A DNA stretch of 60,056 nucleotides, from contig JANJGN010000557.1 of NCBI GenBank assembly GCA_026770705.1, forward strand, positions 3,945 to 64,000, given 5' to 3'. The translations under genes and the position numbers were made by a program. The stretch comes from Isurus oxyrinchus (taxonomy: Eukaryota). Numbering within the stretch: position 1 is the stretch's first letter; each line of letters begins with the position of its first letter. A model generated the notes under the pieces. That model worked only from the letters and a program-made list of their open reading frames with translations. It had not been told where the DNA came from and did not search any database. Positions 821-58,840 of this stretch are shown here, piece after piece.

Positions 821-824
821 AGCA

Positions 825-3781: not shown

Positions 3782-3984
3782 GTTAAGCTAAGAGATGTCC
3801 CTCTGGGTGAGGTGTTTCTTGCACATGACTCTACGTCTACCACCCAGATAGACTGGTCACTTCCGCAGTTTGATATTATTATGTTCGTGCCTTTAATATT
3901 GTCGCCCTCTATGAATTTAACATCATTTCCTTCTGTCGTTTCCCCTGAAATTCTCATTCTTGTTTTCAATCCCTCCTCAGCGAC

Positions 3985-14319: not shown

Positions 14320-14459
14320 TCAAACAGTCTGTCGACTTCCTTTCACTGTTTGTCTCTCCCAGACACAGACTCCAGTGATAGTGATAACCACAGCCACAAG
14401 GAATATCACAGCTCGTATTCCCAGGATCAGGATCACGTGCAGAATCTCTCCTCCACTGT
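14320..14459 (-). CDS. Transmembrane/terminal exon with intramembrane Arg
   Basis: Acceptor ttctttctgtgtgttctctag|, phase 1: (D)SGGEILHVILILGIRAVIFLVAVVITITGVCVWERQTVKGSRQTV*; Arg codon 14413-14415. This frame is not in the ORF track. Confidence 0.8.
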
Positions 14460-17400
14460 CTAGAGAACACACAGAAAGAAATCATCACTGACTCTCCGCT
14501 TTCAATCTCTCACTCTGGCTGAACAATCAAGCTTCATATCACTGCAACATTTGCTGTAATATTGACCCATTCACTGGGATTCAATGTGGAATGAATGTTT
14601 TCACTGTAAACACTCTAAGAGTGGACAATCGGAACTTTCTCCTTAGCGTGGAACATTGGTGAGAATGGATCATTGTGCTGTTGGACTCCCTGTCCAATGT
14701 TTCTCTCCATCGCTGTGTACAGGATTGTGCTGTAGAAAATTCTGGAAACCTTTAGTGCCGGGTGAAAATCCATCTCAGCCGTGTGTGCGAATCGGGCAGG
14801 ATCGGGATGGACTCCCCCACGGATTTACACCCCCCGCTTAATAAACAGTTCCAATCTTTACCCAGAGAGAGGGGAGAATGTGGAACTCGCTCCCACAGGG
14901 AATGGTTGAGGTGAATAGTAGGAAATTAGGAAGTGAAATTGCTTGAAAAGCTTGGAGATGCAAGGGTTAAGTGTTACCGTGCTACCACTGGTGGGAGAGT
15001 GTAACTACAGCGTGATGTTTACATAGGCAATCCCCATTATGAACAAGGACATCATGTGAAAAATGGGCACTGGAAAGCTGAGAACTTGATGTAAGCTTTT
15101 CAGCAACAGGAATTCCCTTCCTAAACCTCTCCACTTCCCTCTTATTCTCAGATACTCATACAAAATTTCACACAAAATCACGTAAGGAGGAATTGGGACT
15201 GGTGACTGGTCAAAGAGTTAGATTTCAGGAAGGTTCTTAAAGTAGGATAGAGAGTTGGAGAGGCAGAGAGTATCTGTGAGTATCTCTGTGCATCTGAGTG
15301 TCTGTAATAGACTTTGCAATTTCCATATTCTTCCATAAATATGAAAGGGAACACAAATCCCAGAATCCAGGTCAACTCTCCGGTGCAGCACTGAGGGAGG
15401 TCAGGTAATCCACAGGGGAGTATGTGCTAGTGTGTTTGTTTGTGAGTGTGTCTTTGTGTGTGCTCATAGATGTGGGATTGTGTGTCTGCAGGTGTCTATT
15501 TAAGGCTGGATATTTATGTGTGTTTTTGTAGTGTTTCAATCTGAGAGAGATGTTGAAGTTTGCCTTAAGTAACGTTCCACAGTGATGGTTATGAACCCCT
15601 CCACTGCTCCATGTTCATTCTCTGAGCACACTGATAGTCTCCAGTGTCCCTGGATGTAACGTGAGGAATCACCAACCACAGCTCATTGTTGGAACTTGTT
15701 CTGTTCATTGTGATATTCAGATGTCAGGACCGGACTCAACAAGACAGATTGCAGGTTTACCAACAGAAAGTGAACAACAATTTATATTTAAAGGGAAGAG
15801 AGTGCTGGTTAATCAGCAAGTGGTCTCTGATTGGAGGAGGTGTTGCCATGGAAAATAATGTGTGTGAGATGTAAAGTTTAGACAGCTTGTCTCTTCATTC
15901 AGCAACAATCAAATAAAGATCAGTTAACTTCTATCGACTGTGAAGCACTTTGAGAGGCATGAGAATGTGGATACTGAGAACAGGCTGCACTGTCAGAGGG
16001 TCAGCGCTGAGGGAGTGCTGATGTAGAATGAAGGGTGTCCGTTCTTACCTTGCACAGTTAGTACGAGGGTCCGCTCCGATGAAACAGATGGATATCTCAC
16101 TCTGCAGCTGAGAGTGTGTCCATGGTGTTTGAGTGATGGGATCAGGGTCAGAACAGAAGTATAGGTCAGAGTGACACCATGCTGAGTTACAGTGTTTGAG
16201 ACTGATCCAGGTACGTCAGTGGGAGTGTCCCAGGTTAAGACAGGTGCTGCTGTTCCATTGCACGTTGTGTTGAAGGTGCAGCTTACATCCACAGGCTTTC
16301 CTGCAATAATTTCAGCAGGGAATATCGTGGGTTTATCTGTGAAATCTAACAGACAGAGAATGGATCCTTTTAGAGAAATATAACGTGAAGCATCAGTTCA
16401 AATAGAAATCACAGTCCCACAAGAAAAAGCACTTTTACAAGGATGATATCAGATCTGAGAGGTTACAATGATTAGGAGAGAATTTCCTGCTTTGAGACTT
16501 TGGTGTTTCTGTCTCTCAGCTTAATACACGTTCACTCCGAGACACTTGAACTTATAATAGTGGGTGAGGGTGGTGGAGCAGACCAGAGTTTGGAGTGCAC
16601 TAACCCATCAGTCCCTCAGCGATCTGGGCCATTTTTTACTTTGCAATTTGTGGGAGCTTGCTGTATGCAAATTGGTTGCTGTGTTTCCCACATTACAATA
16701 GTAACTACAATTCAGGAATCAGCTCATTGGCTGTGAAGTGATTTGGTCCATGCTGAGGTGGTGAAAGGTGCTACAGAAATGTGAATCTTTCTTCTGTCGC
16801 TAAGTCAGACTTCGAGACAGGATTAGAGAGATCGATAGGAGTGGATAACCTGATAACATTGATGGACACAGTCAATACATTTAATCATTGATATTAAAGT
16901 GAGTATTAGAGGTTGCTTTAGGAGTGAATTGGAAGCGATCACCAGGTTATTGAGAATCAGACAGTGTGTTATAATAAGCTGTGTTTTGTGTTAATACGTA
17001 AACGTCACAGTTTGTGTTATTTCCCATTGAGTGTTGAATGTGAATTGTTGAGTAATTATAACACAGCACTTACCAGAAACGGGAAGCTGGGTTACAGGGT
17101 AATAGTTATGGCTCGGACCATTGTCAAATTCTATTCTGAAAAAATAAGGACCCGCATCTTCCCGTCTGATGTTGTTTATAATCAGGGAACAGTCGCCATC
17201 TTTCAGGTCTCCAGACAGCCGGGTCCAATGGTGGAACCGTGGTAACTCGTGACTGTGATCCTTGGAGTGAAAGGCTATAGACGATGTTCTCCATTCCTCA
17301 TTATTAAACCAGACTCCACCTCGCGGTTGGTTTTCCAGACACGATGGATAACTGTAATGACATGGAATCTGTACACAGGAACCTTCCTGCACTGTCACCT

Positions 17401-20400
17401 GTCGTGGATTGTCACCTTTCCACTCTTGCGAGGGTTCAGCTGGGGAGAGAAATCTCAATATTTATCTCTGGATGGTTTGTGGATCCACTGAACCCAATAT
17501 TTACAGATGAGGCTGAATTGGGGGGATGGTCAATACTGAGGAGAATGGCAACAAATTATATTGTCAGGAAGAATAGAAAAACAGGATATAATTTAAATGG
17601 AGACAGGCTGCAGAATGCAGTACAGAGGGATCTGGGTGTCCTGGTACATGAATCACAGAAAGTCAGCAATCAGGAACACCACAGAATGAGGAAGGCAAGT
17701 GGAATGTTGGCCTTTATTGCAAAGGGATGGAGTATAAAAGGAGGGAAGTCTTGCAACAGCTGCACAGGGTGTTAGTGAGATTGTAACAGGATCATTGTGT
17801 ACAGGCAGTTCAGAGAAGCTTCACTGGGCTGATTCCTGGGATTAAAGGGTTTGTCCTGTGAGGAAATGTTGAGCAGGTTGGGCCTGTATCCATTGGAGTT
17901 TAGAAGAATGAGGGGTGAGCTTATTGAAACATATCCGATTCCGAGGGGGCTTGACAGGGTGGATGCTGGGAGGATGTTTCCCCCTCGTGGGGGAATCTAG
18001 AACCAGGGAGCACAGTTTCGGAATGAGGGCTCTCCCATTTAAGACTGAGATGAGGAGGAATTTCCTCTCTCAGAGGGGCGCTAGCCTGTGGAATTCTCTT
18101 CCCCAGAGAGCAGTGGAGGCTGGGCCATTGAATAGACTCAAGGCTGAGTGAGGCAGGTTTTTGATCGACAAGGGAGTCAAGGGTTTGGGGGACAAGCAGG
18201 AAAATGGAGTTAAGGCCGCAACCAGATCAGTGAGAGCAGGCTGGAGGGACCGAATGGCCTGCTCCTGTCCCTATTTCTTATGTTCCTACATTCTTACCTT
18301 CCTAAAATATTAAAGCTGCAGAATAAACATGCAAGTGAATGACCCGCTCGACCCACCTTCCATCTGGGGGTCCCATGGGGAGGACCCTTCCTGAGCCAGA
18401 TCCACCAGCCAACATGGTCTGGATCTGAGCACAGGAGACACGGGGGGGGAGGGACTAACAGGCTCCTTGTGACAGGCCCCGTCTGTCCAATGGCTGGCTT
18501 TCAGCTGCCAAGGCCAGAGTGGTCCTTGCTAAAACCGGCTCAGGACAGGCCAGGACCCCTGTGCAGACCCCCTCCAGCGCTGCAGCCTCTGTACAAACCC
18601 CTCATGCGCTTGTGGAGAGACACAAACAAGGCTGCACATTACCGAGGAGAATCCCCTCTACGGGCTAAGGGGCTGACTCATCACCTTAAACTCAGCAAAT
18701 GAGGAGGCTCTCGCTCGGTATCGGGGCTTGGCATTGGCTCAATAAAAATAAGAGCTGTTTCAGCACAGTGGCTGGGGTGGGAACCTGATTGAAGGGATTC
18801 AAACATGGAGTTCCGGGAAAGATGGGAACGGATTCGGGAGATGGAAACACGTTGCAGGACTTTGGAGGGGAAAGAGAGGCTGGGGATGGGACGGGAGATT
18901 ACACAGACAGTGTGAGGGGTGGAAGGTGTAGTGGGGAGGAGACACTTTACTCAGGGGGGAGGTGTCATCACCCCTCAGCTCGGTTTACGTTACAGCTATG
19001 ATGTGGATTCAATCACACACAATAAGCTCATGGATCTGGGAGCAGAAATAGACAAATCATTAAAAATAGTGACGCTGGTTAACACGGCCAAAAAACAAGC
19101 AAATCAAACACTATTATTTCCCATTGAGTGTTGGATGTGAATTGTTGAGTAATTATAACACAGCACTTACCAGAAACATGAAGCTGGGTTTCAGGACGGT
19201 CGTTGTATCTATTCCTGCTGTCAAAATCTGTTCTGAATAAATAATATCCTGCATCTTCCCGTCTGATGTTGTTTATAATCAGGGAACAGTCACCATCTTT
19301 CAGGTCTCCAGAAAGCCGGGTCCGATGGTGGAACCGTGGTAACTCGCGACTGTGATCCTTGGAGTGAAAGGCTATAGACCATGTTTCCCAATTCCTTCTC
19401 ATATACCAGATTCCAACAGGTGATCTCGGTACTAAATATGATGGGTAGCTGTAATGACACGGAATCTGTACACACGAACCTTCCTGCGCTGTCACCTCTC
19501 GTGGAGTGTCACCTTTCCACACTTGTGGTAGTCCAGCTAGGGGGAGAAATATCAATATTTAACTCTGAATGTTTTGTCAATCCACTAGACTCAAAATCCA
19601 CCCCCTCCATCACTGGGGCACAGTGGCTGCAGTCTGGACTCACAATGAATGCCCCAATGTTTCACAACACATTGAAGAGAATCCTGGATACAGGAGTGGA
19701 CAAGTTCATTCTACATTGGCTCGTAGCCCTCAGGAACCTGCTTAGTGAAGCCAGTCTTCCACCCAACACAGTGTCTACAAGACACACTAATTGAAGTGAG
19801 TTCACTGCTGATTTACAAACTAGGACAATGGATTAGGAGCCTTCAGAATTCCCCCATTATCACCATCATGAATCATGAATTGGCCTAGCTGTCCTAGATC
19901 CTCAGTGTCTAAGGCAGTGGTTCCTATTGTGATGAAAGTATAATAATTTTCATAAAATTTTATAGTATATTGTGAAGTAGGTTTATGGGGGTACGCATGA
20001 TGGGTCTGCATGTGATTTAAGTACATTTGGAGTTAATTAGATTGGAAGTTTAAAATGATCAAAAGGAGCTAGGTGCTTGACATGCTATTGAGTAAACATG
20101 GATGCTGCTTAGCATGGAAGGTATGAAGAGAATTTGCATTTTTATTTCAATGAAGGGGTTGTTGGATTTCAAAGGAATCTTAGTTTGTTTACAAATAGCC
20201 AGATAAGCAAGACTAAGGAATGTGCTTATTTTTCTCAAAGGCTCTTGGCAATATGGGCACCACAAAAGAATTTGTTATGAGGAAGATACAGTTTCAAAAA
20301 CATTTGGAACAATAGAATTTTCATGTTACAAAGAGAGAAATATATATCTATCAGGGAGAATGAAAGGCTATGTGTCAGAATGCCATGTAAGATCTAACAC

Positions 20401-23400
20401 GAGTGTGTGATATAGTCTTAATGAAACCACTAGCATTTGTGCACAAGCCTGCTATCCAACAGAACTGAAGTTGGGGAAAAGCCACTTGGAATTCCTCTGT
20501 GCAGGGTATTGCTTTTATATTGTGTTAACTTGCTGAGTTTGTTTTAAATATAAACTCTATTTTTGGACCGTTGCCTTAAAGGGAGTGTAACTGGGAGTCA
20601 GGTAATTTCGGAATTTTAAGAATTATTATTAAAATGGTAATTGTAGTGTCATGTACATGCATGATATCATTTATTCTGAGAGCAAGTATTTTAATTTAAT
20701 TTTCAAATCTCTAAAGTTCCTAGAGTAATTATTGCTTCTGAAGTCAGTGCACACATCTCATAATAAATACAAATTGCAAAATCATTATGATCGTGTGACC
20801 ACCTTTCTCTCATGGACTTGGTCTGCCTGGCACACATCACCTGCCAAGTGATAACACTGCTGTAATATGCCTTTCAGGGACAGCAGCATGACATCACTCG
20901 AGGGGAAGTGTGTCATGTGATTTTTAGGAACTGGGGATAGGTTAAGTAAGTTCTATGTGTATTTTTGTGTGTTAGGCATAAGGTCTATCTTTAAGTTCAA
21001 GTTTAGTTTGATTTCTGTATTTGTGTGTTAAGAAAGGGGGAAACTTGACTTTTAGTTTCATTTTTATAGAAGCCAGAAATCTAATGAGGTTTGGTGACTG
21101 TTGAAGGAAAGTCAAAACAAATACAATGTGTAAGAAACTGTGCTGTTGCCTGGCAACAGTGATCCAGAGGGAAGGTCCCACAGAGACAGAGAAAAACAGA
21201 AAAGTACTTTCAGTTCTGTTGAAAGGAGTTGCCAGGAGAAGCAGCAAAGGAGCGGGACAGATAGTCAGTCCCAAATTATAGAAGAAGCCAAAACTATCGA
21301 GTGGAACAGGAGAAAGGGCCAAGAAGACGCTCTAGTCCAAGGAAGATCAGGAATCTGGACAAGGTCCTGTTAAGTCAAGTTAAGGTTGAGGTTCAGAGGA
21401 GGGATCCAAGCTAAAAGAGAATGGGCAAAAGGACACAGACCCAAAGCAAAATAGGCTTGTGAGAAGCCAGAAGATCCTAGGAGACATCACAGGTTGGTGA
21501 CTCATTACTACGGCCATGTGAAGCCATGGTGTTCCATTGACACGGCTGAGCATTGGAGAGACAGGGCGTGGAAGGAAGGCTGAATGCACGTGGCGATCCA
21601 GGGGGCAGGAACATGGGAAGGAGAGTTTGAAATAGTGAAAGTGGACCCTTGTGGAAGGTGTCTGAGTGAAAGTGTCATGTTGGAGAAGATTCCAAAGAGA
21701 GCACTTGGTGAGTAGAGATTGGAAACTCTCATGTGAAAGAAGCAGTTTCGTTAGACCAGTTGCCTCACGGTGTAACAAGCGTCTAGAGTCAGTTGAGGAG
21801 GGACCCGGAGCATTTGTTCCAAGTGGGTTCTGTCACTTGGTTTCAGAATGTGGTGTCCCTGACCCCAGGTCGTCTACTGTTTTACATCGACTGTGTACTT
21901 AGTGTGAACATGAGAGTATAAGTTAGTTATTGTAATTGCGTTATCCTTATGAAACTGTAAATGTATAGGTCTGGGTGAAGGAGTAATGTCATATAGTTTG
22001 TCTTTCCTAGTTTAATAAATGTTTTATTCTTTTGTTAGAAGTTCATCAGATGACTCCTGTGACTCTGTTCAGTAGCCACACTCCACATTCCTAAATAAAA
22101 AATAAAAGTTAGGACCTATCAAGCTGAGTTCCACCCTGGGATCTGACTTGCCCAGTAGTAACATCAGCTGGGATGATAACACCATCCAGTCCAAGTTTCA
22201 CTTTGGTCTGTGAGCAGAACACAGCTCACACAGTTTGGCTGCAGGTGTCTCCCAGCTTTCTATCCTTGTACATCTGTTCTCATGTCCCTATTCAAAATAA
22301 CTGAACCCACAATGTATTTACCCAATTCCGTATCAGTGGTTGGTGCCTTTATATCATTATAAAAACACAACATGGTGATCAGCGGTGACCAAACATTCTG
22401 GCAGCAAGATTCAGTACAATATGAAAATGATACCAGAAACCTCTTATTCTCTGTCCTTCTCAAAGATCCATCCCTGCAGCAGGAGCCTTAAGAGTTATTG
22501 ATGTGGGGCTTAATTTATCAGATTGCAGAATGATCTGGAAGAGAAGGAAGTCATTTGGCCCATCGAGCCTGTGCTGGGCCTTTGAAAGTTCTGTCCAATA
22601 AGTCCCACTCTAACCTCTGCTCTCTCCTCCACAGCCCTGCAAAATGTCCCCTTCAAGTATTTATCCAGTTCCCCTTCTGAAAGTTCCTGTTGAATCTGCT
22701 TCCACCGGCCTTTCAGGCAGTGAGTCAATGGTCTCTCTCTGAGCTGCAAAGTGCTCAGATTCTGTGAAATTTAAACTCTGCAGCAGATCAGAGACACTCA
22801 TGATAACTCAGAATATTTGACAGTTTTACACACAGACAGCTTTACCTTCCTCTCTCTTTCAGTTATCTTGCTCCCTTATTGAAGTATCTAGCATGGTGAG
22901 AATGGACAGGAAGTGTGACACTGAACAGCCTGTCTATTCTAGGAGCTGCTGTGTTGTCTTCATGGGAAATTCTGACTAAAATCAGCAAATGACACAAAAT
23001 TTCAGGGCATTGTTATCCGAGTCCTAGCATCAGGATAGACCTCATTCCCCAGTTTTTATCCCTGTTTCTCTATTCAGCCGATCGCTCCCCTGTCACTGGC
23101 TGACCTACATTGGCTCCCAGTCCAGCAATGACTCAAATTTCAAATTCTCATCATTGATTTCTTACCCGCAATCCACCCTCTCCCCTCCCTATCTCTGTAA
23201 CCTCCTCCAGTTCTTACAACCCTCTGAGATCTCTATTCTCCTCCAATTCTGCTGTCAGACATGGAGTCAGTGTATATCAGTGAGCACAGGGGTGATGGGT
23301 GAATGGGACTTGGTGTGAGGTTGTACACTGGTACTGTTCACTGCTGAATCGGTTCCCAATCACAGCTCAATAAGAATGATCTTTTACAAAGACTATTAGC

Positions 23401-23472
23401 CATAAATCTGTCTGAGCTGACGATGATATTACCTTGGAGAAGTGACAGGAGGAAGTAAGATTTCCCGATCAT
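14320..23472 (-). CDS. Activating-type Siglec-like receptor, spliced: 23472-23433, 19536-19171, 17439-17074, 16345-16049, 14459-14320 (402 aa with both V exons, 280 aa with one)
   Basis: All exons have AG/GT borders and phase-1 junctions and join in frame: leader, V-set, V-set, C2, TM with Arg, short tail. AATAAA on the minus strand at 13931-13936. Confidence 0.75.
15574..15726 (-). pseudogene. Broken copy of the 282-bp C2-set repeat exon
   Basis: Only the 3' half remains (MNRTSSNNELWLVIPHVTSRDTGDYQC); 1-nt deletion after the Cys; acceptor and 5' half replaced by unrelated sequence; donor GTTACT. Confidence 0.85.
16049..16345 (-). CDS. Siglec domain-2 C2-set exon
   Basis: 297 bp, DFTDKPTIFPAEIIAGKPVDVSCTFNTTCNGTAAPVLTW...LSCRVRYP...VLTVQ; C-x5-C pattern of Siglec domain 2. 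Confidence 0.92.
17074..17439 (-). CDS. Siglec V-set exon V2
   Basis: 366 bp; GSCVQIPC, GDCSL, EDAGPYFFR with the essential Arg at 17135-17137; CAG acceptor and GTAAGT donor. Confidence 0.9.
17560..18300 (+). mobile_element. CR1 LINE 3' fragment
   Basis: YNLNGDRLQNAVQRDLGVLVHESQKVS...FKTEMRRNFLSQRGASLWNSLPQRAVEA; frameshifted. Confidence 0.88.
19171..19536 (-). CDS. Siglec V-set exon V1
   Basis: 366 bp; GSCVQIPC, GDCSL, EDAGYYLFR with Arg at 19232-19234; TAG acceptor and GTAAGT donor. Confidence 0.9.
19928..20856 (+). mobile_element. Solo LTR-like element
   Basis: TGT...ACA termini; homologous throughout to 52659-53549. Confidence 0.65.
20861..22181 (+). mobile_element. Second LTR-like element abutting the first
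   Basis: TGTAA...TAACA termini, AATAAA near the 3' end, similar organisation to its neighbour. Confidence 0.5.
23433..23472 (-). CDS. Leader exon, coding part (whole exon 23433-23514)
   Basis: MIGKSYFLLSLLQ+G|GTAATA; same peptide and 82-bp exon length as 33051-33132. Confidence 0.85.
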
Positions 23473-23922
23473 TGTCCACTCCCAGATATTCCATCCACTT
23501 CTGACTCTCAAACTCTGAAAGAGAAAGGAGTTAATGAGACCTCACCTCTTGTCCGACAGCGGTCGAGAGATCAGAACTGCTTTTAGACAATGTCTTCACT
23601 GACTAATTTGATTCTCTGTGGGATGATAGGTGCTCTGCAGAGAGTCACAAGACTTTAACAAAGAAAAACAATGAAGGGTTTGCATTTCTATAGCACCTTT
23701 CACCACCTCAGGATGTCCCAAAGCTCATGTCTCTGCTCTTCCCTCATCCCTTGAGCTAGAAAGATGTTCTGTACAACAGACTTGAGCCTCACACCCAGAT
23801 CTCAATAATCAGTAGAAATCTTTCAAAGGCATCAATCATTGGAATCTGTCTTTATAAAGTCACAACATCAACAAAGGACGGTGTTGGTGGTGGAAGTGAA
23901 TTCCAATCGTTCCGTTACTTAC

Positions 23923-24063
23923 CCAGGACCTGTCCGACTGCTCGCCTGGGGAGGAACTGCCCACACGCTCTGCTTGGGCTGAATGACCTCTTCCTGTGCT
24001 GCTCCCTCTGTGTATTTAATTAGAATGGGTGGATGTGTCACTGTGAGACATAATGAGGAAGTG
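23923..24063 (-). promoter_or_regulatory. Putative 5'UTR exon and ETS/PU.1-box promoter of the minus-strand Siglec
   Basis: GG|GTAAGT donor at 23923; GAGGAAGTG at 24055-24063; mirrored at 32521-32660. Confidence 0.5.
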
Positions 24064-24287
24064 GGTAACCAGTGAGAAGATTGAGGATGTTTTGTGCTCT
24101 CAGCAAAACGTTTACCATGTGTGATCTGTCAGCTCATATTTGGGCAGCTGTAGTCATGAAGCTTCTCCATTGGCTCTGTGGGATTAGACCCCTTCCCCTC
24201 ACCTCGGAGGCTGAAACTCAAGCGATAAGAGTTCCCAATACAGGTCTCTGGCCATATGGTCCATGTCGACAATCTGTGGTATCATTA

Positions 24288-25150
24288 CTGAGGGAGTGGT
24301 GCACTGTCAGAGGGTCAGTGCAGAGGGTATGCTGCAATGTTGGAGGGGTCAGTACTGAGTGAGTGCTGCACTGTCAGAGGGTCAGTAATGTGGGAGTGCT
24401 GCACCATCAGAGGGTCAGTGCTAAGGAAGTGCTGCACTGTTGCAGGGTCAGTACTGAGGGAGTGCTGCACTGTCAGAGGGTCAGTGAAAAGGGAGTGCTG
24501 CACTGTTGGAGGGTCAGTACTGAGGGAGTGCTGCACTGTCAGAGGGTCAGGGCTAAGGGAGTGCTGCACTGTTGGAGGGTCAGTACTGAGTGAGTGCTGC
24601 ACTGTCAGAGGGTCAGTGCTAAGGCAGTGCTGCATTGTTGGAGGGTCAGTAGTGAGGGAGTGCTGCACTGTCAGAGGGTCAGGGCTAAGGGAGTGCTGCT
24701 CTGTTGGAGGGTCAGTACTGAGTGAGTGCTGCACTGTCAGAGGGTCAGTGCTAAAGCAGTGCTGCACTGTTGGAGGGTCAGTAGTGAGGGAGTGCTGCAC
24801 TGTCAGAGGGTCAGGGCTAAGGGAGTGCTGCACTGATGGAGGGTCAGTACTGAGTGAGTGCTGCACTGTCAGAGGGTCAGTGCTAAGGAAGTGCTGCACT
24901 GTTGGAGGGTCAGTACTGAGGGAGTGCTGCACTGATGGAGGGTCAGTTCCGAGGGAGTGCTGCACTGTCAGAGGGTCAGTGCTAAGGAAGTGCTGCACTG
25001 TCAGAGGGTCAGTGCTAAGGAAGTGCTGCACTGTACAGAGGGAGTGCAAGACTGACAGAGGGTCAGTAATGAGGGAGTGTGAGACTGACAGAGGGTCACT
25101 ATTGAGGATGTGCTGCACAGTCGGGGGGGTCAGTACTGAGGGAGCACTGC
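24288..25150 (+). repeat. 33-bp minisatellite
   Basis: About 25 copies; source of the 320-aa and 372-aa spurious ORFs. Confidence 0.95.
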
Positions 25151-25299
25151 ACTGCCATAGGTGGTTTCTTTCAGATGACATGAGAGAGAGGGTTAAACCC
25201 ACTGAGACAAGACTGACACTAACGAGGCTGCTCATTAATTTAACCCTATCAGTGCCAGTAAATGATGTGAGGATGTCTTCTGTTTCCATTTCTCTGTAG

Positions 25300-25548
25300 G
25301 GTAAACAGAACGTGCTGATTTCTGAGCCCCGGAACACAACCAGAGACACAACTAGCGAGGGGGAGACCCCAGCTCCCCGGGGTCTCTCTGAAGGTGCATT
25401 GGGAGGCGATGCTGGACATTGGCACATCGACAATCCCGACGGCCTTCTCTACGCCAATCCCCAAGTATTGAGGATGTCCAGTGATGATGGGTCTGTCCAC
25501 AGGGAAGAGGAGACGGAATACGCACAGATCAGGTTCGAGCATAACTGA
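25300..25548 (+). other. Orphan Siglec terminal cytoplasmic exon (ITSM kept, ITIM lost)
   Basis: 249-bp open paralogue of 52119-52367: GKQNVLISEP...LLYANP...TEYAQIRFEHN*; no plus-strand ectodomain or TM exon found upstream in the window. Confidence 0.85.
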
Positions 25549-26139
25549 ATGAGAAATGGGGAGTGGGAGTGAGGAGGTGTGGGGGTGGGGGTAGTGATTG
25601 AGATTCCTGGGAACAGGAAACAACCCACTGGGGGAGAGGGGGAGAGAGGGAGGAAGGGATGGAATTGGGCTGCGGTTGGTGTGGTTTCGAATGAAATGCT
25701 TCTCCAGAGAGGACTGGATGCTGAGCCACTGGGGATAGAGATTCACTGTCTCTCTCTGTCTCCCTCTCTCTCTCGCTCTCTTGTTCTCTCTCTCCCTCTC
25801 TCTGTCTTTCTTTCTGTGTCTGTCTCTCATTCTCTATCTCCAGCTCCTCCTTTAAGATGCCCGTTAATAACTGACTTTGTTGACTCAGCTGTTGGGCTTC
25901 TGTCCCTTATATCTCCTCATGTGCCTCAGAGTCAGGTGAAGATGTGACTAACAATTCCCGGATGAGCCTTGGGACATTTTGCTACATTAAAGGTGCTATA
26001 TAAATGCAAGTAGTTGCAGTAAGTCTGATCTGCTTCGATTAACAATGGAACCACAAAGGGTCCTTCGACAGGGCGTGTGTGCAGGAGGATCCCAATAAAT
26101 ACATTGTGCTATTAGATTTTTAATTCTTACATCGAATGT

Positions 26140-26585
26140 GGCTGTCACTGGTGATGCCAGCATTAATGCCCATCCCTAATTGCCCTTGAGAAGGTGGTGG
26201 TGATCAGCCTTCTTGACCCGCTGCAGTCCATGTGGTGTAGGTACACCCACAGTGCTGTTAGGGAGGGAGTTCCAGGATTTTGACCCAGCGACAGTGAAGG
26301 AACGATGATATATTTCCAAGTCAGGATGGTGAGTGACTTGGAGGGGAACTTCCAGTTGGTGGTGTTCCCATGTGTCTGCTGCCCTTGTCCTTCTAGATGG
26401 TAGAGGTCGTGGGTTTGGAAGGTGCTGTTGAAGGAGCCTTGCTGAGTTGCTGCAGTGCATCTTGTAGATGGTACACACACTGCTGCCACTGTGTGTTCGT
26501 TGTGGAGGGAGTGAATGTTTAATGTGGGGGATGGGGTGTAGATCAATCGGGCTGCTTTGTCCTGGATGGTGTCAAGCTTCTTGAT
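26140..26585 (-). mobile_element. LINE 3' end fragment
   Basis: CTIYKMHCSNS.RLL.QHLPNPRPLP...RSFTVAGSKSWNSLPNS plus the tail shared with the SINEs. Confidence 0.8.
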
Positions 26586-26717
26586 TCTGTGCTTTGTATA
26601 GAACTGATTTAAAGAGACAGTCCCAGTCGTTGGTCTAAGATTACAGTGGGCTCTGTGTCTGTGCTACACGGACTCTCTGCTATATGATAACCACAGTGTG
26701 ATATTGTGTTATTACAG

Positions 26718-26799
26718 GAGAAAGACAGCGATGGAGGAGAGAGTTTCAGGGACCAGTGACATTGCCTTGACTCCCAGTCCACTCTCTGTGAAGCACCAG
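26718..26799 (+). other. Orphan juxtamembrane cytoplasmic exon
   Basis: 82-bp paralogue of 50919-51000 (RKTAMEERVSGTSDIALTPSPLSVKHQ) with intact splice sites. Confidence 0.85.
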
Positions 26800-26934
26800 G
26801 TACAGGAACTGTTTACACTTACACCAAATCTTCAATCTCAGTGTGTAGACAACACATGTCCCAGATTCCCAGCCCAGTTACCCACTGATTTGTACCTGTG
26901 GAGTCAGCAATGGTTCAGTATCATGCTGTCTCTC

Positions 26935-27692
26935 TGTTATGACACAGCAACTGGTAAAGGCTGTTGTTTAAAATCCCAGAGGGAAACTTTAAACAACTGT
27001 CATAACCTATATTTCCCAGTGGAATGTTTGAGATGCAGCTCTAAATTCAGGAATAAGACCATCAGTTCTTGAGATGGGTTTATATCAAACTACATGAGAC
27101 ATTTATTAATTTTCACAAGTTAATCATATGCACATGGCTACAAACTAGTATTATCATAACTTTTTAACAAATTCCCAAACTAAAGTCCTCTAAGACAACC
27201 CATAGACTTTAAGCAGATTCCAAGCGAAGCATTTTCACCTCACAAATTCCAAATGAGGTTCCTTTCACTTTGGTTCCTTTGCAGACAGGTGTAGGCTTAC
27301 AGCTGCTTTGATGTTACAAGCCTCTGCTCTGCACACACAAAACTGCTCAAGTTATACCCAGCACTGCTCTTTGAATGTAAATTCTCATTGTATCATCAGG
27401 ACCTTTGATCTCCATCTCTTCTAACAATAAATCCTCTGTCATAGTATCAATTTTATTAGTAATATAAACATTGATTGGTTTAAGAATTCACTCCCAGGCT
27501 TTGAATCCTCCTTTTAAAAATGCAATATGCCTCTTTACCTCTTTGTTTACATCTCAAAACTACTATACATCAAAGTCCCCAGACCGGCTGGCTTTAATCC
27601 AATTAAAACACACACACACACACCCACAGACTAAACCTCTGTTTAAAAAGACAATTTCCAATTACAATACATACATTAATAGATTCATAACG
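26935..27692. mobile_element. Solo LTR-like insertion
   Basis: TGTTATGA...TCATAACG inverted ends; homologous to 31185-32003; absent from the paralogous intron 51001-52118. Confidence 0.65.
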
Positions 27693-28114
27693 CTCTGTCT
27701 CTGACCCTTCATCTCTCTCTCTCTCTCTCATCCTCTCTCTGATTACAAGATTCATGTTATTGAGCCTCACACCAGGCACCTGAGTGCAGAATCCAAGCCG
27801 ACACTCGCCAGAGCCTTACCGAGGGAGTGCGAGACTGACAGAGGGTCAGTACTGAGGGAGTGCTGCACTGTCAGAGGGTCAGTACTGAGGGAGTGCTGCA
27901 CTGTTGGAGGGTCAGTACTGAGGGAGCGCTGCACTGTCGGAGGGTCAGTACTGAGGGAGCACTGCACTGCCATAGGTGTTTTCTTTCATAAAACATGTGA
28001 GAGAGGGTTAAACCCACTGACCCACGACTGATACTAACGAGGCTGCAGAATAATTTAACCCTATCAGTGCCAGTAAATGATGTGAGGATGCCTTCTGTTT
28101 CCATTTCTCTGTAG

Positions 28115-28363
28115 GGTAAACAGAACGTGCTGATTACTGAGCCCCGGAACACAACCAGAGACACAACTAGTGAGGGGGAGACCCCTGCTCCCCAGGGTCT
28201 CTCTGAAGGTCCAGTGGGAGGCGATGCTGGACATGGGAACCCCGACAATCCCAACGACCTTCTCTACACCAATCCCCAAGTCTTCAGGGTGTCCAGTGGT
28301 GATGGGTCTGTCCACAGGGAAGAGCAGACGGAATACGCACAGATCAGATTCAAGAGAAACTGA
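28115..28363 (+). other. Second orphan terminal cytoplasmic exon
   Basis: 249 bp, open: GKQNVLITEP...LLYTNP...TEYAQIRFKRN*. Confidence 0.85.
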
Positions 28364-29489
28364 GCGTGAAAAAGGGAGAGGGGGTCAGGAGGTTTGTGGA
28401 TGGTGGCAGGGATGAAGATTCTTGGGAACATGAGACAACCCACTGGGGGAGAGGGGGAGAGGCGGAGAGAGGGAGGAAGGGACTGAATGGGTCTGTGGTT
28501 GGTGTGGTTTGGAATGAAATGTTTCCCCAGTGACGACTTGATGCTGAGTCATTGGGGACAGAGATTCAGTNNNNNNNNNNNNNNNNNNNNNNNNNNNNNN
28601 NNNNNNNNNNNNNNNNNNNNNNNNNNNNNNNNNNNNNNNNNNNNNNNNNNNNNNNNNNNNNNNNNNNNNNNNNNNNNNNNNNNNNNNNNNNNNNNNNNNN
28701 NNNNNNNNNNNNNNNNNNNNNNNNNNNNNNNNNNNNNNNNNNNNNNNNNNNNATTAACTGGCTTTGTGAAATCAGCTTTTTGTCACCTGTCCCTAATACC
28801 TCATTATGTGTCTCAGAGATGGATTTATATGTAGGTAACAATCCCCTGAAGAGATTTGGGACAGTTTGTTACATTAAGTGTGCCAGATAAATGCAAGTTG
28901 TTGAAGGAAAGTTGATCTGCCTCGATTCAGAATGGTAATTCAGAGGGTCCATCGACAGGGCGTGTGTGCAACAGCCTCGCAATAAATGCATTGCACGGCA
29001 ACAACTAAGCATGTCCTTTGATGCTGATGCATCCCAGTACTGCTGTGTGGACACATCACAACCGAGGGACTGCCTGACTGCGTGCAGCCAACATGGCCGA
29101 ATAGTAATTAGCAGAAATGTGATGTCACTGAACTTTGTTGACATTTCAGAAAGTGCTTTCTGAATTCTGCAACTTGTTTATTCTGTGATAGATTACAAGA
29201 AGCCTTTGCATTTTCTATAATATTACATTTATTGTCACAAGGGATTGAAATGCCCAGACACCACCACCTGGAAGTTCCCCTCCAAGACACACATCATCCT
29301 GATTTTGAAATATATCGCCATTCCTTCACTGCCACTAGGGTCAAAATCTTGGACTTCCTTCTCTAACTGCATTGTGGGTGTACCTACACCACATGGACTG
29401 CAGAGGGTCCGGAAGGCAGCTCACCACCACCTTCTCAAGGTAATTAGGGATGGGCCATAAATGCTGGCCTAGCCAGTGATGCCCACTTC

Positions 29490-32410: not shown

Positions 32411-32520
32411 AAAATGTCAGGGTGTCCAGCTGATCCTACTTGTTCTGTTCTTATATTCTTATACAGACACAGGGTTTGCTGACAGTGCACAGCTAAGTGC
32501 TGTTCACTCACTTTGTTCCA

Positions 32521-32660
32521 ACTTCCTCATTTTGGCTCACAGTGACACATCAGCCTTTTCTAATTTAATACACAGATGGATCAGCACAGGATGAGGTCAT
32601 TCAGCCCAAGCAGAGCGTGTGGGCAGTTCCTCCCCAGGCGAGCAGTCGGACAGGTCCTGG
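32521..32660 (+). promoter_or_regulatory. Putative PU.1-box promoter and 5'UTR exon of the plus-strand Siglec
   Basis: ACTTCCTCATTTT at 32521-32533; GG|GTAAGT donor at 32660. Confidence 0.5.
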
Positions 32661-33092
32661 GTAAGTAACGGAACGATTGGAATTCACTTCCACCACCAAC
32701 ACCGTCCTTTGTTGATGTTGTGACTTTATAAAGACAGATTCCAATGATTGATGCCTTTGAAAGATTTCTACTGATTATTGAGATCTGGGTGTGAGGCTCA
32801 AGTCTGTTGTACAGAACATCTTTCTAGCTCAAGGGACATGAGCTTGGGGACATCCAAGGTGGTGAAAGGTGCTATAGAAATGCAAGACCTTCATTGTTTT
32901 TCTTTCTGAAAGCCTTGTAACTCTCTGTAGAGCACCTATCATCCCACAGAGAATCAAATTAGTCTGTGAAGATATTGTCTAAAAGCAGTTCTGATCTCTC
33001 AAGAGCATTCGTACAAGAGGTGAAGTCTCATTAACTCCTTTCTCTTTCAGAACTTCAGAGTTAGAAGCTGAGGAAATATCTGGGAGTGGACA

Positions 33093-33132
33093 ATGATCGG
33101 GAAATCTTACTTCCTCCTGTCACTTCTGCAAG
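33093..33132 (+). CDS. Leader exon, coding part
   Basis: MIGKSYFLLSLLQ+G|GTAATA; acceptor tcctttctctttcag ends at 33050. Confidence 0.85.
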
Positions 33133-50700: not shown

Positions 50701-52367
50701 AAGGCATCAGAGCTGTGAGTGTGTGCTCTGCTCAAAGCAAATGTCAAACTGAGATTGGATCACATGACACACTTCCATTATAGTGATGTCACGCTGATAT
50801 CCCTTATTGGAACTAGAGACAGTCCAGTCGTTGGTGTACGGTTACAGTGGGCTCTGTGTCTGTGCTGCACTGACTGTCAGCTATATGATAACCACAGTGT
50901 GATATTGTGTTATTGCAGGAGAAAGACAGCGACGCAGGAGAGAGTTTCAGGGACCAGTGACATTGCATTGACCCCCAGTCCACTCTCTGTGAAGCACCAG
51001 GTACAGGAGCTGTTTACACTCACTTCAAAGCTTCAACCTCAGTGTGTAGACAACACGTATACCAGATTATCAGCCGGGTTACACACAGATATCTCCCTGT
51101 GAAGCAATGGCTCAGTGGTCAGCACTGTCTCTCGCTCCCAGCCGCTGTCACCCTCCATCACTCGCTCTTTGACCAGAAATCTGAACACAATAATGACAAG
51201 GCACCTGATGTCAGTAGTGAGGGAGTGCTACACTGTCGGAGGGTCAGTACTGAGGGAGTGCTGCAATGTCAGAGTGTCAGTACTGAGGGAGTGCTGCACT
51301 GTCGGAGGGTCAGTACTGAGGGAGTGCTGCACTGTCGGAGGGTCAGTACTGAGGGAGTTTTGCACTGTCAGAGTGTCATTACTGAGGGAGTGCTGCACTG
51401 TCGGAGGGTCAGTACTGAGGGAGTGCTGCACTGTCGGATGATCAGTACTGAGGAAGTGCTGCACTGTCAGCGGGTCAGTACTGAGGGAGTGCTGGACTGT
51501 CAGAAGGTCAGTACAGCGGGATTGTTGGACTGTCAGACGGTCAGTACTGAAGGAGTGCTGCACTGTCAGAGAGTCAGTACTGAGGGAGTGTTGCACTGTC
51601 GGAGGGTCAGTAGTGAGGGAGTGCTGCACTGTCAGAGGGTCAGTACTGAGGGAGTGCTGCACTGTCAGAGGGTCAGTATTGAGGGAGTGCTGCACTGTCA
51701 GAGGGTCAGTATTGAGGGAGTGCTGCACTGTTGGAGGGTCAGTACTGAGGGAGTGCTGCACTGTCAGAGGGTCAGTACTGAGGGAGTGCTGCACTGTCAG
51801 AGGGTCAGTATTGAGGGAGTGCTGGACTGTCAGAGGGTCAGTATTGAGGGAGTGCTGCACTGTCAGAGGGTCAGTATTGAGGGAGTGCTGCACTGTCAGA
51901 GGGTCAGTATTGAGGGAGTGCTGCACTGTTGGAGTGTGATAGAGATTAAATTATAAAGAGAGAGAGAAAGCGAGAGAGAAAGAGAGACAGAGAAAGAGAG
52001 TGAAAAAAGGCTTAAACCCACTGAGACACGACTGACACTAATGAGGCTGCACAATAATTTAACCCTATCAGTGCCAGTAAATGATGTGAGGATGTCTTCT
52101 GTTTCCATTTCTCTGTAGGGTAAACAGAACGTGCTGATTACTGAGCCCCGGAACACAACCAGAGACACAACCAGTGAGGGGGAGACCCCAGCTCCCCGGG
52201 GTCACTCTGGAGGTCCAGTGGGAGGCGATGTTGGACATGGGAACCCCGACAAACCCGACGAGATTCTCTACGCCAACATCAACTTTTCAAAGCTGTCCAG
52301 CGGTGACAGGACTGTGCACAGGAGCGAGGACACGGAATACGCACAGATCGGGTTCCAGAAAAACTGA
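33093..52367 (+). CDS. Inhibitory-type Siglec-like receptor with 13 Ig domains (1410 aa; 1316 aa if repeat 8 is skipped)
   Basis: Exons of 40+366+297+11x282+97+82+249 = 4233 nt join in frame: leader, V-set with Arg, C2, 11 C2 repeats, uncharged TM, ITIM and ITSM. Confidence 0.85.
36264..36629 (+). CDS. Siglec V-set exon
   Basis: GSCVQIPC, GDCSL, EDAGPYYFR with Arg at 36566-36568; canonical splice sites. Confidence 0.93.
37001..37297 (+). CDS. Siglec domain-2 C2-set exon
   Basis: 297 bp, phase 1-1, near-identical to 16049-16345. Confidence 0.93.
37410..37845 (-). repeat. 33-bp minisatellite
   Basis: Reverse-orientation array in the intron. Confidence 0.92.
37976..38257 (+). CDS. C2-set repeat exon 1
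   Basis: 282 bp, tttag|...|gtgagt; ICSVESFPASNLTW...DTGDYQCVAENEHG. Confidence 0.9.
38927..39208 (+). CDS. C2-set repeat exon 2
   Basis: 282 bp, open, AG/GT intact. Confidence 0.9.
39844..40125 (+). CDS. C2-set repeat exon 3
   Basis: 282 bp, open, AG/GT intact. Confidence 0.9.
41348..41629 (+). CDS. C2-set repeat exon 4
   Basis: 282 bp, open, AG/GT intact. Confidence 0.9.
42410..42691 (+). CDS. C2-set repeat exon 5
   Basis: 282 bp, open, AG/GT intact. Confidence 0.9.
43356..43637 (+). CDS. C2-set repeat exon 6
   Basis: 282 bp, open, AG/GT intact. Confidence 0.9.
44414..44695 (+). CDS. C2-set repeat exon 7 (most diverged)
   Basis: 282 bp, open, AG/GT intact; private changes NPA, VKS, NLMW, PVN, AVDG. 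Confidence 0.88.
45479..45760 (+). CDS. C2-set repeat exon 8, donor mutated (probably skipped)
   Basis: Open frame but followed by ATGAGT instead of GTGAGT. Confidence 0.6.
46544..46825 (+). CDS. C2-set repeat exon 9
   Basis: 282 bp, open, AG/GT intact. Confidence 0.9.
47799..48080 (+). CDS. C2-set repeat exon 10
   Basis: 282 bp, open, AG/GT intact. Confidence 0.9.
48848..49129 (+). CDS. C2-set repeat exon 11
   Basis: 282 bp, open, AG/GT intact. Confidence 0.9.
49944..50040 (+). CDS. Transmembrane exon (uncharged)
   Basis: tttttacag|(R)RDSSKWTVGLFTAGIMLSVFLAGIFIFICVR(K)|gtaagt; phase 1 to 2. Confidence 0.9.
50919..51000 (+). CDS. Juxtamembrane cytoplasmic exon
   Basis: Phase 2 to 0, RKTATQERVSGTSDIALTPSPLSVKHQ; bridges the TM and terminal exons in frame. 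Confidence 0.88.
51210..51935 (+). repeat. 33-bp minisatellite
   Basis: About 21 copies in the last intron. Confidence 0.95.
52119..52367 (+). CDS. Terminal exon with ITIM and ITSM
   Basis: ILYANI (52263-52280) fits I/V/L/S-x-Y-x-x-I/L/V; TEYAQI (52332-52349) fits T-x-Y-x-x-I/V. Confidence 0.92.
   Translation, partial: GKQNVLITEPRNTTRDTTSEGETPAPRGHSGGPVGGDVGHGNPDKPDEILYANINFSKLSSGDRTVHRSEDTEYAQIGFQKN

Positions 52368-58809: not shown

Positions 58810-58840
<31 letters not shown>

What the first reader, a model, noticed from the sequence alone, without database searches (positions are those of the whole stretch)
14320..52367. Head-to-head activating/inhibitory paired Siglec-like receptors in a probable shark
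Seen: two divergently oriented genes share the leader peptide, the V-set framework and an almost identical domain 2. One ends in a TM with Arg and a 12-aa tyrosine-free tail; the other ends in an uncharged TM with ITIM+ITSM. Known: this is the logic of human SIGLEC5/14 and of head-to-head SIGLEC11/16, homogenised by gene conversion, where the activating member uses a charged TM residue to recruit DAP12. Inference: an ancient or independently evolved paired sialic-acid receptor system in cartilaginous fish. I cannot verify whether it has been described.
Basis: partly seen in the sequence, partly recalled or inferred. Interest (0 to 1): 0.95.

Follow-up and report, generated by a model that had tools for sequence, protein, structure and literature searches.

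The report
Shark Siglec-like activating and inhibitory genes
Two neighbouring shark immune-sensor genes of the Siglec type point away from each other, one built to switch cells on through a helper chain and one built to hold them back; they belong to a large shark gene family that databases already label automatically, and I found no paper that describes it.

Summary
The minus-strand gene is leader, V1, V2, C2 and a final exon encoding a membrane span with a buried Arg and a 12-residue tyrosine-free tail (14459-14320). It has two stacked V domains, not one, and it skips a decayed Ig exon remnant. The plus-strand gene is leader, V, C2, 11 near-identical 282-nt Ig exons, an uncharged membrane span (49944-50040) and two tail exons carrying ITIM (ILYANI) and ITSM (TEYAQI).

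The V domains match Siglecs best, with the sialic-acid Arg aligned. The leaders are the same peptide and the C2 exons are 99.3% identical. The V domains are only 72-81% identical in protein, so this is a looser pair than human Siglec-5/14.

Contigs from one sample show canonical joints 17074->16345 and 16049->14459. They cannot be tied to this copy rather than a paralogue.

All three assembly gaps lie in simple repeats outside exons.

NCBI models in many sharks and rays are already named Siglec-like. Three of the 150 listed representatives end in the same Arg cassette.

This scan found the family before on other DNA of this genome. I found no paper on it.

Adaptor use, ligand and co-expression are untested.

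The parts
23433..23472 (-). Minus gene leader exon: MIGKSYFLLSLLQ plus G, phase 1, gtaata donor.
   Evidence: tblastn with P0005 residues 1-13 gives 100% identity. Sequence read.
19171..19536 (-). Minus gene V1 exon, 366 nt, V-set of Siglec type. Arg in YYLFRTD.
   Evidence: Pfam V-set 7.5e-14 and Ig_CD22 4.4e-9. Sialoadhesin 5e-15 with the Arg aligned. Splice sites read.
17074..17439 (-). Minus gene V2 exon, 366 nt. It begins A-EPSQEWKG, carries the extra Cys in PSCLEN, and has the Arg in YFFRIE.
   Evidence: Internal V domains of P0001 and P0004 begin AEPSQEWKG and have PSC; in P0005 the internal V has PSC but begins VGLSQEWKG. Joint 17074->16345 in contigs.
16049..16345 (-). Minus gene C2-set exon with the SCTFNTTC Cys pair.
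   Evidence: Pfam C2-set_2 6.4e-8. 99.3% nt identity to 37001-37297. Sequence read.
15574..15723 (-). Remnant of an Ig exon. The 5' half is missing, there is a frameshift, and the donor is GTTACT. It is skipped by the 16049->14459 joint.
   Evidence: Run X4 (organism B) has a contig that joins 15574 to 14459.
14320..14459 (-). Final coding exon of the minus gene: TM with buried Arg (ILGIRAVIF) and the tail ERQTVKGSRQTV, then stop. The 3' UTR runs on below 14200.
   Evidence: KD mean 2.93 over 21 residues. Joint 16049->14459 with CT..AC ends in X1-X3. The same cassette ends P0006, P0024 and P0136.
32590..32835 (+). About 240 nt that are 100% identical to the other arm (about 23750-23995, minus strand), 260-500 nt upstream of the leader ATG, with a TATAAA. 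Candidate shared promoter or non-coding first exon.
   Evidence: The function is inferred only.
33093..33132 (+). Plus gene leader exon: MIGKSYFLLSLLQ plus G, phase 1.
36264..36629 (+). Plus gene V exon, Siglec type, Arg in YYFRIE. It is a mosaic of V1-like and V2-like stretches.
   Evidence: Sialoadhesin 7e-16. Site patterns.
37001..37297 (+). Plus gene C2-set exon.
   Evidence: MAG and CD33 second domains among the best hits.
37976..49129 (+). Eleven tandem I-set Ig exons of 282 nt, phase 1-1, all open, 94-99% identical. They start at 37976, 38927, 39844, 41348, 42410, 43356, 44414, 45479, 46544, 47799 and 48848. The 8th has an AT in place of the GT donor.
   Evidence: Pfam Ig_3/I-set. P0016 of another shark has a similar long array.
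49944..50040 (+). Plus gene TM exon: RDSSKWTVGLFTAGIMLSVFLAGIFIFICVRK. No charge inside the span. Phase 1 in, phase 2 out.
   Evidence: tblastn with P0005 residues 250-294, E 4e-14..
50919..51000 (+). Plus gene cytoplasmic exon 1: RKTATQERVSGTSDIALTPSPLSVKHQ.
52119..52367 (+). Plus gene cytoplasmic exon 2 with ITIM ILYANI and ITSM TEYAQI, then stop.
25300..28363 (+). Orphan tail exons between the two leaders: cyt2 at 25300-25548, cyt1 at 26718-26799, cyt2 at 28115-28363. All are open. The ITIM position reads LLYANP or LLYTNP (Pro at +3), and TEYAQI is kept. No V, Ig or TM exon lies upstream on this strand.
28571..28752 (.). Assembly gap, intergenic, in a (CT)n simple repeat. The flanks are collinear with the tandem copy at 25.0-26.1 kb.
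39216..40430 (.). Span that holds two assembly gaps (39216-39360 and 40134-40430), each in an intron just behind Ig exon 2 or 3.

Best explanation
The locus holds two divergently transcribed members of a large Siglec-like receptor family of sharks and rays.

- The minus-strand gene encodes leader-V1-V2-C2. It then splices past a dead Ig exon to a terminal exon that gives a membrane span with a buried arginine and a 12-residue tail without tyrosine. Such a protein cannot signal alone. The arginine should pair with the membrane aspartate of an ITAM adaptor chain (FcR-gamma, DAP12 or a CD3-zeta-like chain; which one is unknown), so ligand binding would activate the cell.
- The plus-strand gene encodes leader-V-C2, about 11 repeated Ig domains, an uncharged span and a tail with an ITIM and an ITSM. 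After tyrosine phosphorylation these would recruit SHP-type phosphatases and dampen the cell.

The V domains keep the Siglec sialic-acid arginine and the Siglec cysteine pattern, so sialylated glycans are the likely ligands.

The two genes share modules (leader, C2, V segments) through an inverted duplication followed by patchy gene conversion. Their outer V domains have diverged. They are best read as an activating-type and an inhibitory-type member of one family, not as a matched pair with one shared ligand.

Shown: exon anatomy, open frames, splice phases, Siglec homology, spliced contigs. Inferred: adaptor pairing, phosphatase recruitment, ligand, co-expression.
For: - Siglec homology of the V exons: Pfam V-set and Ig_CD22. 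The best solved relatives are sialoadhesin (7e-16), MAG, Siglec-5, Siglec-8 and CD33, with YYFRIE aligned to the R97 motif.
- C2 exons: C2-set_2; the second domains of MAG and CD33 are hit.
- All exons are open and all splice phases fit, 1-1 through the Ig exons, then 2, then 0.
- Arg-TM exon: KD mean 2.93, R at position 11 of 29.
- Tail motifs: ILYANI and TEYAQI. They are conserved in shark homologues P0004, P0005, P0013 and P0015.
- Spliced contigs: joints 16049->14459 and 17074->16345 with GT..AG ends in X1-X3. A V-exon 3' end is found joined to the start of V2. Both variants at 14376 in the TM exon are present.
- Homologues: 3 of the 150 listed representatives end in the same Arg cassette (78-82% identical, R kept). 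XP_072325011 has the same C2-to-DSGGE junction.
- Stacked V-V models occur in several sharks.
- Inverted duplication arms. C2 dS is 0.013 against 0.18-0.25 for the V exons. There is a 240-nt patch of 100% identity. The plus V exon is a V1/V2 mosaic.
Against: - The contigs over the C2 exon carry the plus gene's letters at both sites that tell the two C2 copies apart (16122 and 16294). The minus gene's own C2 was therefore hardly seen, if at all, and the joints may come from paralogues elsewhere.
- The joint sides are short (18-31 letters), and X1-X3 are one sample.
- Expression of the plus gene was not tested directly.
- The ectodomains differ in domain number, and the V domains are 72-81% identical, which weakens the idea of a matched pair.
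- No adaptor gene, ligand or cell type was examined.
- The 8th Ig exon lacks a GT donor.
- The number of Ig exons rests on an assembly with two gaps inside the array.
Confidence: 0.7

Rival explanations
1. The minus-strand gene is a recent chimeric relic or pseudogene. A recombination joined the 5' part of one family member to the 3' half of an Ig exon and the Arg-TM exon of another. This copy would be silent or poorly expressed, and the spliced contigs would come from intact paralogues.
For: - The 5'-truncated, frameshifted Ig remnant sits just where the homology to the plus gene ends.
- Orphan tail exons lie nearby.
- The C2 contigs carry the plus-gene variants at 16122 and 16294.
- The family is large.
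Against: - All five coding exons are open, with canonical splice sites and matching phases.
- Skipping the remnant keeps the frame and gives the same C2-to-DSGGE junction as XP_072325011.
- The window's own TM-exon variant at 14376 is present in X2 and X3.
- Contigs drop rare variants, so absence is not shown.
Confidence: 0.2
2. The head-to-head layout, or the 11-exon Ig array, is an assembly artefact: a misoriented contig at the 28571-28752 gap, or a repeat array that was collapsed or expanded.
For: - There are three gaps in the span, two of them inside a tandem array of about 1-kb units that are 85-98% identical.
- The orphan tail exon ends just before the first gap.
Against: - The tandem duplicate 25.0-26.1 kb against 27.85-28.97 kb stays collinear and in the same orientation across the gap, which matches a (CT)n stretch.
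- The inverted arms extend to 24076 and 32507, well away from the gap.
- The Ig units differ from each other enough to be told apart.
- P0016 from another shark has a similar long array.
Confidence: 0.07
3. The receptors are Siglec-shaped but do not read sialic acid. The V domains have been turned to protein or pathogen ligands, as in some Siglec-like and CD33-related members that lost or repurposed the site.
For: - dN/dS is about 1.0 between the plus V and the minus V1, with the changes bunched in the C-C' region and in the G-strand region just behind the FR motif.
- The aromatic residue at the sialoadhesin W106 place is Tyr.
- Stacked V domains are not a feature of known Siglecs.
Against: - The essential Arg, the A-strand Trp and the Siglec cysteine pattern are kept in all three V domains.
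- The Arg is kept in the homologues read.
Confidence: 0.2

Closest known systems
Human SIGLEC5/SIGLEC14 paired receptors (PMC4042635)
   Same: One member has an ITIM plus an ITIM-like or ITSM tail. The other has a short tail and a basic residue in the membrane span that needs an ITAM adaptor. The two genes are neighbours. Parts of the ectodomain are kept alike by gene conversion.
   Different: In the human pair the first two domains are almost identical. Here only C2 is (99%), the V domains are 72-81% identical and the domain numbers differ (V1-V2-C2 against V-C2-11 Ig). The adaptor here is unknown.
Primate SIGLEC11/SIGLEC16 (PMC5701461)
   Same: An inhibitory and an activating gene whose ectodomain-coding parts are homogenised by repeated gene conversion.
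   Different: Siglec-16 has a Lys and pairs with DAP12 (my own knowledge, not checked here). Here the residue is an Arg in a GIRAVIF context. Conversion tracts here are short patches (C2 exon, V segments, a 240-nt upstream patch).
Conserved Siglecs: sialoadhesin (Siglec-1), MAG (Siglec-4), CD22
   Same: They are the best sequence matches of the V domains. The long chain of Ig domains in the plus gene recalls sialoadhesin. The nearest non-shark relatives are fish proteins named MAG-like, CD22-like or sialoadhesin-like.
   Different: As far as I know, sialoadhesin has no ITIM and MAG is a myelin protein. None of the three has stacked V domains or an Arg-TM partner.
NCBI Gnomon models in sharks and rays named Siglec-8/10/12/13/16, CD33-like or MAG-like (e.g. 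XP_078389734, XP_072326180, XP_072409577, XP_072325011)
   Same: The same family: the leader is identical to XP_078389734, other representatives have near-identical leaders, V identity is 66-76%, and the C2, the Arg-TM cassette and the ITIM/ITSM tail are the same.
   Different: These are automatic names, not orthology calls. None is this copy.

Membership tests
Siglec family (sialic acid-binding Ig-like lectins) | N-terminal V-set domain with the conserved F-strand arginine that holds the sialic acid carboxylate. | tested here: met
   YYFRIE, YFFRIE and YLFRTD align with the YNFRFE (R97) motif of sialoadhesin. E-values are 7e-16 and 5e-15. Pfam Ig_CD22 and V-set.
Siglec family (sialic acid-binding Ig-like lectins) | Siglec cysteine pattern: CxxxPC in strand B, a partner Cys in strand E (DCSL), and an extra Cys in domain 2 for the V-to-C2 disulfide. 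| tested here: met
   All three V domains have CVQIPC and GDCSLII. C2 has SCTFNTTC. The bonds themselves are not shown.
Siglec family (sialic acid-binding Ig-like lectins) | V-set followed by C2-set domains, one TM span, type I orientation with a signal peptide. | tested here: met
   Leader exons. C2-set_2. TM exons.
Siglec family (sialic acid-binding Ig-like lectins) | Binding of sialylated glycans. | not testable with these tools
   Needs glycan arrays with V-Fc proteins and Arg mutants.
CD33-related Siglec subgroup | Cytoplasmic tail with a membrane-proximal ITIM and a distal ITIM-like or ITSM motif. | tested here: met
   ILYANI at residue 49 and TEYAQI at residue 72 of the last exon. The resemblance to the human LHYASL and TEYSE[IV] motifs is recalled from memory and was not tested.
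CD33-related Siglec subgroup | Orthology or closest V-domain kinship with mammalian CD33-related Siglecs, and shared synteny. | tested here: inconclusive
   Sialoadhesin and MAG score a little better than Siglec-5, Siglec-8 and CD33. The nearest non-shark relatives that I looked up are fish MAG-, CD22- or sialoadhesin-like proteins. No tree with mammalian sequences was built and no flanking marker gene lies in the window.
Paired activating/inhibitory receptors | Neighbouring genes with opposite signalling ends: a basic TM residue with a short tail against an ITIM tail. | tested here: met
   The leaders are 9.6 kb apart and divergent.
Paired activating/inhibitory receptors | Near-identical ligand-binding ectodomains. 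| tested here: not met
   C2 is 99% identical. The plus V is 81% identical to V2 and 72.5% to the outer V1 of the minus gene. The domain numbers differ.
Paired activating/inhibitory receptors | Association of the charged-TM member with an ITAM adaptor, and co-expression of both members in the same cells. | not testable with these tools
   No shark adaptor sequence was available to complex prediction. Only contigs of one sample were laid, and only on the minus gene.

The most novel reading that the evidence does not exclude
Cartilaginous fishes have a large Siglec system of their own, with ITIM/ITSM members and Arg-TM activating members. These are built from shuffled modules (stacked V domains, a family-wide C2, a portable Arg-TM cassette) and kept alike by patchy gene conversion. 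If its tails and V domains prove homologous to those of mammalian CD33-related Siglecs, inhibitory CD33-type Siglecs and the paired-receptor logic would date to the jawed-vertebrate ancestor. The statement that fish lack CD33-related Siglecs (PMC7226832) would then hold for bony fish only.
Probability: 0.35. Interest if true: 0.7.

Novelty: new member of a known kind. Interest (0 to 1): 0.5.

Why it matters
Paired activating and inhibitory Siglecs have been studied mainly in primates, where they are read as a host answer to pathogens that mimic sialic acid. The fish Siglec paper I read (PMC7226832) covers teleosts only and does not mention sharks. It says that only Siglec-1, CD22, MAG and Siglec-15 are regularly present in fish, and that inhibitory CD33-related Siglecs are lacking.

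A large shark family with ITIM/ITSM and Arg-TM members would show one of two things. Either this logic is older than bony vertebrates, or it arose twice. It would also offer a natural set of swapped modules for testing how ligand domains and signalling ends are recombined.

For this one locus the gain is modest. It is one more member of a family that databases already name and that this scan has met before.

Tried and rejected
- **False leader.** A first scan for the leader picked MIDAFERFLLIIEIW at 32744 (+) and 23839 (-). It has no phase-1 donor and a TATAAA only 12 nt upstream. tblastn with shark homologues then placed the true leaders at 33093 and 23472.
- **False TM exon.** I first took 50.8-50.9 kb for the plus gene's TM exon and met a stop in the hydrophobic frame. 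Homologues showed that the TM exon is at 49944-50040 and that 50919-51000 is cytoplasmic exon 1.
- **Plus gene not laid.** I spent it on the minus gene, so the plus gene's splicing was not tested.
- **No whole-protein step.** Spliced exons were not joined. All searches were run exon by exon, so no whole-protein search, fold or complex prediction was made.
- **No tail search.** I did not search the tail against mammalian Siglecs, because the word-based search would miss such short motifs.
- **Literature.** Searches for Siglec with shark, elasmobranch or cartilaginous fish, and for DAP12 with cartilaginous fish, found no paper on this family.
Full report
**What is in the span**

A self-comparison of the window shows an inverted duplication. 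The arms run 16.0-24.1 kb on the minus strand and 37.3-32.5 kb on the plus strand.

Shark homologues laid on the window by tblastn, together with the sequence itself, give two gene models.

Minus gene:
- leader 23472-23433 (MIGKSYFLLSLLQ, then a phase-1 donor)
- V1 19536-19171
- V2 17439-17074
- C2 16345-16049
- final exon 14459-14320

Plus gene:
- leader 33093-33132, encoding the same peptide
- V 36264-36629
- C2 37001-37297
- eleven 282-nt Ig exons between 37976 and 49129
- TM exon 49944-50040
- cytoplasmic exon 1 at 50919-51000
- cytoplasmic exon 2 at 52119-52367

Every exon is open. Every junction fits in phase: 1-1 through the Ig exons, 2 after the TM exon, 0 before the last exon. All donors and acceptors are canonical except the donor of the 8th Ig exon, which reads AT.

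**The gaps, tested first**

- Gap 28571-28752 lies between the genes. It sits inside the second copy of a tandem duplicate (25.0-26.1 kb and 27.85-28.97 kb). The alignment of the two copies continues on both sides of the gap in the same orientation. The gap stands where the first copy has about 118 nt of (CT)n. The divergent layout therefore does not hang on a doubtful join.
- Gap 39216-39360 begins 8 bases behind the end of Ig exon 2, and gap 40134-40430 begins 9 bases behind the end of Ig exon 3. Both are in introns, where the other units have CA-rich simple sequence. The DNA behind each gap is collinear with other units.
- No reading frame crosses a gap. The number of Ig units is only as good as the assembly.

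**The two signalling ends**

The last minus-strand exon reads DSGGEILHVILILGIRAVIFLVAVVITITGVCVW ERQTVKGSRQTV stop. That is a strongly hydrophobic span (mean Kyte-Doolittle 2.93 over 21 residues) with one arginine at about a third of its depth, followed by a 12-residue tail without tyrosine.

The plus gene's span, WTVGLFTAGIMLSVFLAGIFIFICV, has no charge and is followed by RKRK. Its last exon holds ILYANI (ITIM) and TEYAQI (ITSM).

**Are they Siglecs?**

- All three V exons hit Pfam V-set and Ig_CD22.
- Against solved structures the best matches are sialoadhesin (7e-16 and 5e-15), MAG, Siglec-5, Siglec-8, CD33, Siglec-10 and Siglec-7.
- The FR motif aligns with the sialic-acid arginine of sialoadhesin, and the A-strand Trp is kept.
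- The CxxxPC and DCSL cysteines, and the second cysteine in C2 (SCTFNTTC), fit the Siglec disulfide pattern.
- C2 matches the second domains of MAG and CD33.
- The repeated Ig exon is a generic I-set domain, with MAG among the best hits.

Membership in the Siglec family is met on every feature that sequence can test. Sugar binding is untested.

Whether the genes belong to the CD33-related subgroup is open. The tail has the right pair of motifs. But the V domains score slightly better with Siglec-1 and MAG. The nearest non-shark relatives I looked up are gar, paddlefish and teleost proteins named MAG-, CD22- or sialoadhesin-like.

**Stacked V domains**

The 17-kb V exon has no leader of its own. 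Its homology to the plus gene stops 48 nt upstream of the exon (homology ends at 17487, the exon starts at 17439). The upstream intron of the plus V matches that of the 19-kb V instead.

The 17-kb exon begins A-EPSQEWKG and has an extra cysteine (PSCLEN). Internal V domains of predicted shark proteins with two or three V domains show the same features: P0001 and P0004 have both, and P0005 has the extra cysteine.

One contig joins a V-exon 3' end to the 5' end of a V2-type exon (tables 5c and 7).

The minus gene is therefore V1-V2-C2, not V-C2.

**How alike are the two genes?**

| Comparison | Identity | dN, dS |
|---|---|---|
| C2 exons | 99.3% nt, 97 of 98 residues | dS 0.013 |
| Plus V against minus V2 | 81% protein | dS 0.25 |
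| Plus V against minus V1 | 72.5% protein | dS 0.18, dN/dS about 1.0 |

- The plus V exon is a patchwork. It is V1-like at 36294-36340 and 36582-36595, and V2-like at 36367-36453 and in the downstream intron.
- About 240 nt upstream of both leaders are 100% identical, inside arms that are otherwise about 87% alike.

This mosaic is what short gene-conversion tracts would leave. C2 is also very conserved across shark orders, so selection may add to the effect.

The pair is much looser than Siglec-5/14 (PMC4042635) or Siglec-11/16 (PMC5701461).

**Transcript evidence**

I laid the contigs of four runs on 14200-19900. X1-X3 are one sample of organism A. They show the following joints, with CT..AC ends on the plus strand, which is GT..AG on the minus strand:
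- 16049->14459, one contig per run, shorter side 23-31 letters
- 17074->16345, one or two contigs per run, shorter side 18-29 letters

Such joints also show that these contig sets come at least partly from RNA.

Limits:
- It is one sample, and the sides are short.
- At the two sites that tell the two C2 copies apart (16122 and 16294), nearly all depth carries the plus-gene letters.
- At 14376 in the TM exon, both the window's letter and a paralogue-like letter are present.
- The architecture is therefore expressed in this animal, but the contigs cannot be tied to this copy.

X4 (organism B) has a 674-nt contig that joins 15574 to 14459. That is, the Ig remnant is spliced to the Arg-TM exon.

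**The remnant and the orphans**

Between C2 and the Arg-TM exon lies the 3' half of an Ig exon (about 15723-15574). It has a frameshift and a weak GTTACT donor. The homology to the plus gene ends 32 nt behind C2. The minus gene may thus be a chimera of the 5' part of one family member and the 3' part of another. This is inferred.

Three plus-strand tail exons lie between the two leaders: cyt2, then cyt1 and cyt2. They are open but have Pro at ITIM +3, and no V, Ig or TM exon lies upstream of them on that strand. They look like leftovers of a rearranged third gene.

**Relatives**

A search of 1.84 billion representatives gave 1551 hits at E up to 0.001 and 39 at E up to 1e-30. The top hits whose names I looked up are NCBI models from these species:
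- Scyliorhinus canicula and S. torazame
- Chiloscyllium punctatum
- Stegostoma tigrinum
- Mustelus asterias
- Cetorhinus maximus
- Carcharodon carcharias
- Pristis pectinata
- further down the list, Mobula hypostoma and Heptranchias perlo

They are named Siglec-8/10/12/13/16, CD33-like or MAG-like.

Three representatives end in the same Arg cassette, 78-82% identical, with the Arg kept in ILILGIRA. In one of them, XP_072325011, C2 is joined to DSGGE exactly as here. P0016 (1463 residues) has a similar long run of the repeated Ig domain before an ITIM tail.

The window is clearly from an elasmobranch.

**Known or new?**

This scan has already reported the family on other pieces of this genome (s1-300785, s1-300793, s1-300797 and several first-stage notes).

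Public annotation names it by similarity. My searches of the held literature found no paper on shark or ray Siglecs. A paper on teleost Siglecs states that fish have only Siglec-1, CD22, MAG and Siglec-15 and lack inhibitory CD33-related Siglecs (PMC7226832).

I class this locus as a new member of a known kind.

**Not done**

- No N stretch was filled in.

Noticed in passing
window 6090-6445, 13135-13590, 24280-25160, 37415-37845, 51210-51935, 54175-54400: A 33-bp minisatellite recurs six times on both strands (its translation reads like CTVGGSVLRE or LSTDPPTVQHS). It lies in the intron before each cyt2 tail exon and just behind the C2 exon. A 50-nt stub of it lies behind the minus gene's C2 exon (15972-16020). 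It could be a recombination substrate for module swapping.
   Followed up: partly
window 32590-32835 and 23750-23995: About 240 nt are 100% identical between the two inverted arms, which are otherwise about 87% alike. The patch lies 260-500 nt upstream of both leader ATGs and holds a TATAAA and a GTGTGAG donor-like site. It is a candidate shared promoter or non-coding first exon kept identical by conversion.
   Followed up: partly
window 25300-25548, 26718-26799, 28115-28363: Orphan but open ITSM-bearing tail exons on the plus strand lie between the two leaders. Both cyt2 copies have Pro at the ITIM +3 place (LLYANP, LLYTNP). Their origin and use are unexplained.
   Followed up: partly
window 1-1300 and 56290-60056: Long satellite arrays with a period of about 72 bp and strong G-over-C skew lie at both ends of the window. 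A related 37-bp-period array lies at 3984-4616 in inverted orientation.
   Followed up: no
window 10330-11700 and 53550-54165: Fragments of a LINE-type reverse transcriptase (VVVVGGQSS..FQDITAGV..) lie on the plus strand. The two copies are 84-86% alike.
   Followed up: no
window 45760-45762: The 8th of the 11 tandem Ig exons has ATGAGT in place of the GTGAGT donor. The exon is open, so it may be skipped (the frame is kept) or may use another donor.
   Followed up: no
window 15574-15836 (run X4, organism B): In a related species a 674-nt contig runs unbroken from 15836 to 15574 and then splices to the Arg-TM exon at 14459. The truncated Ig remnant and its upstream DNA are therefore transcribed there, possibly from an internal start near a TTTAAATATAAA at about 15790.
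   Followed up: no
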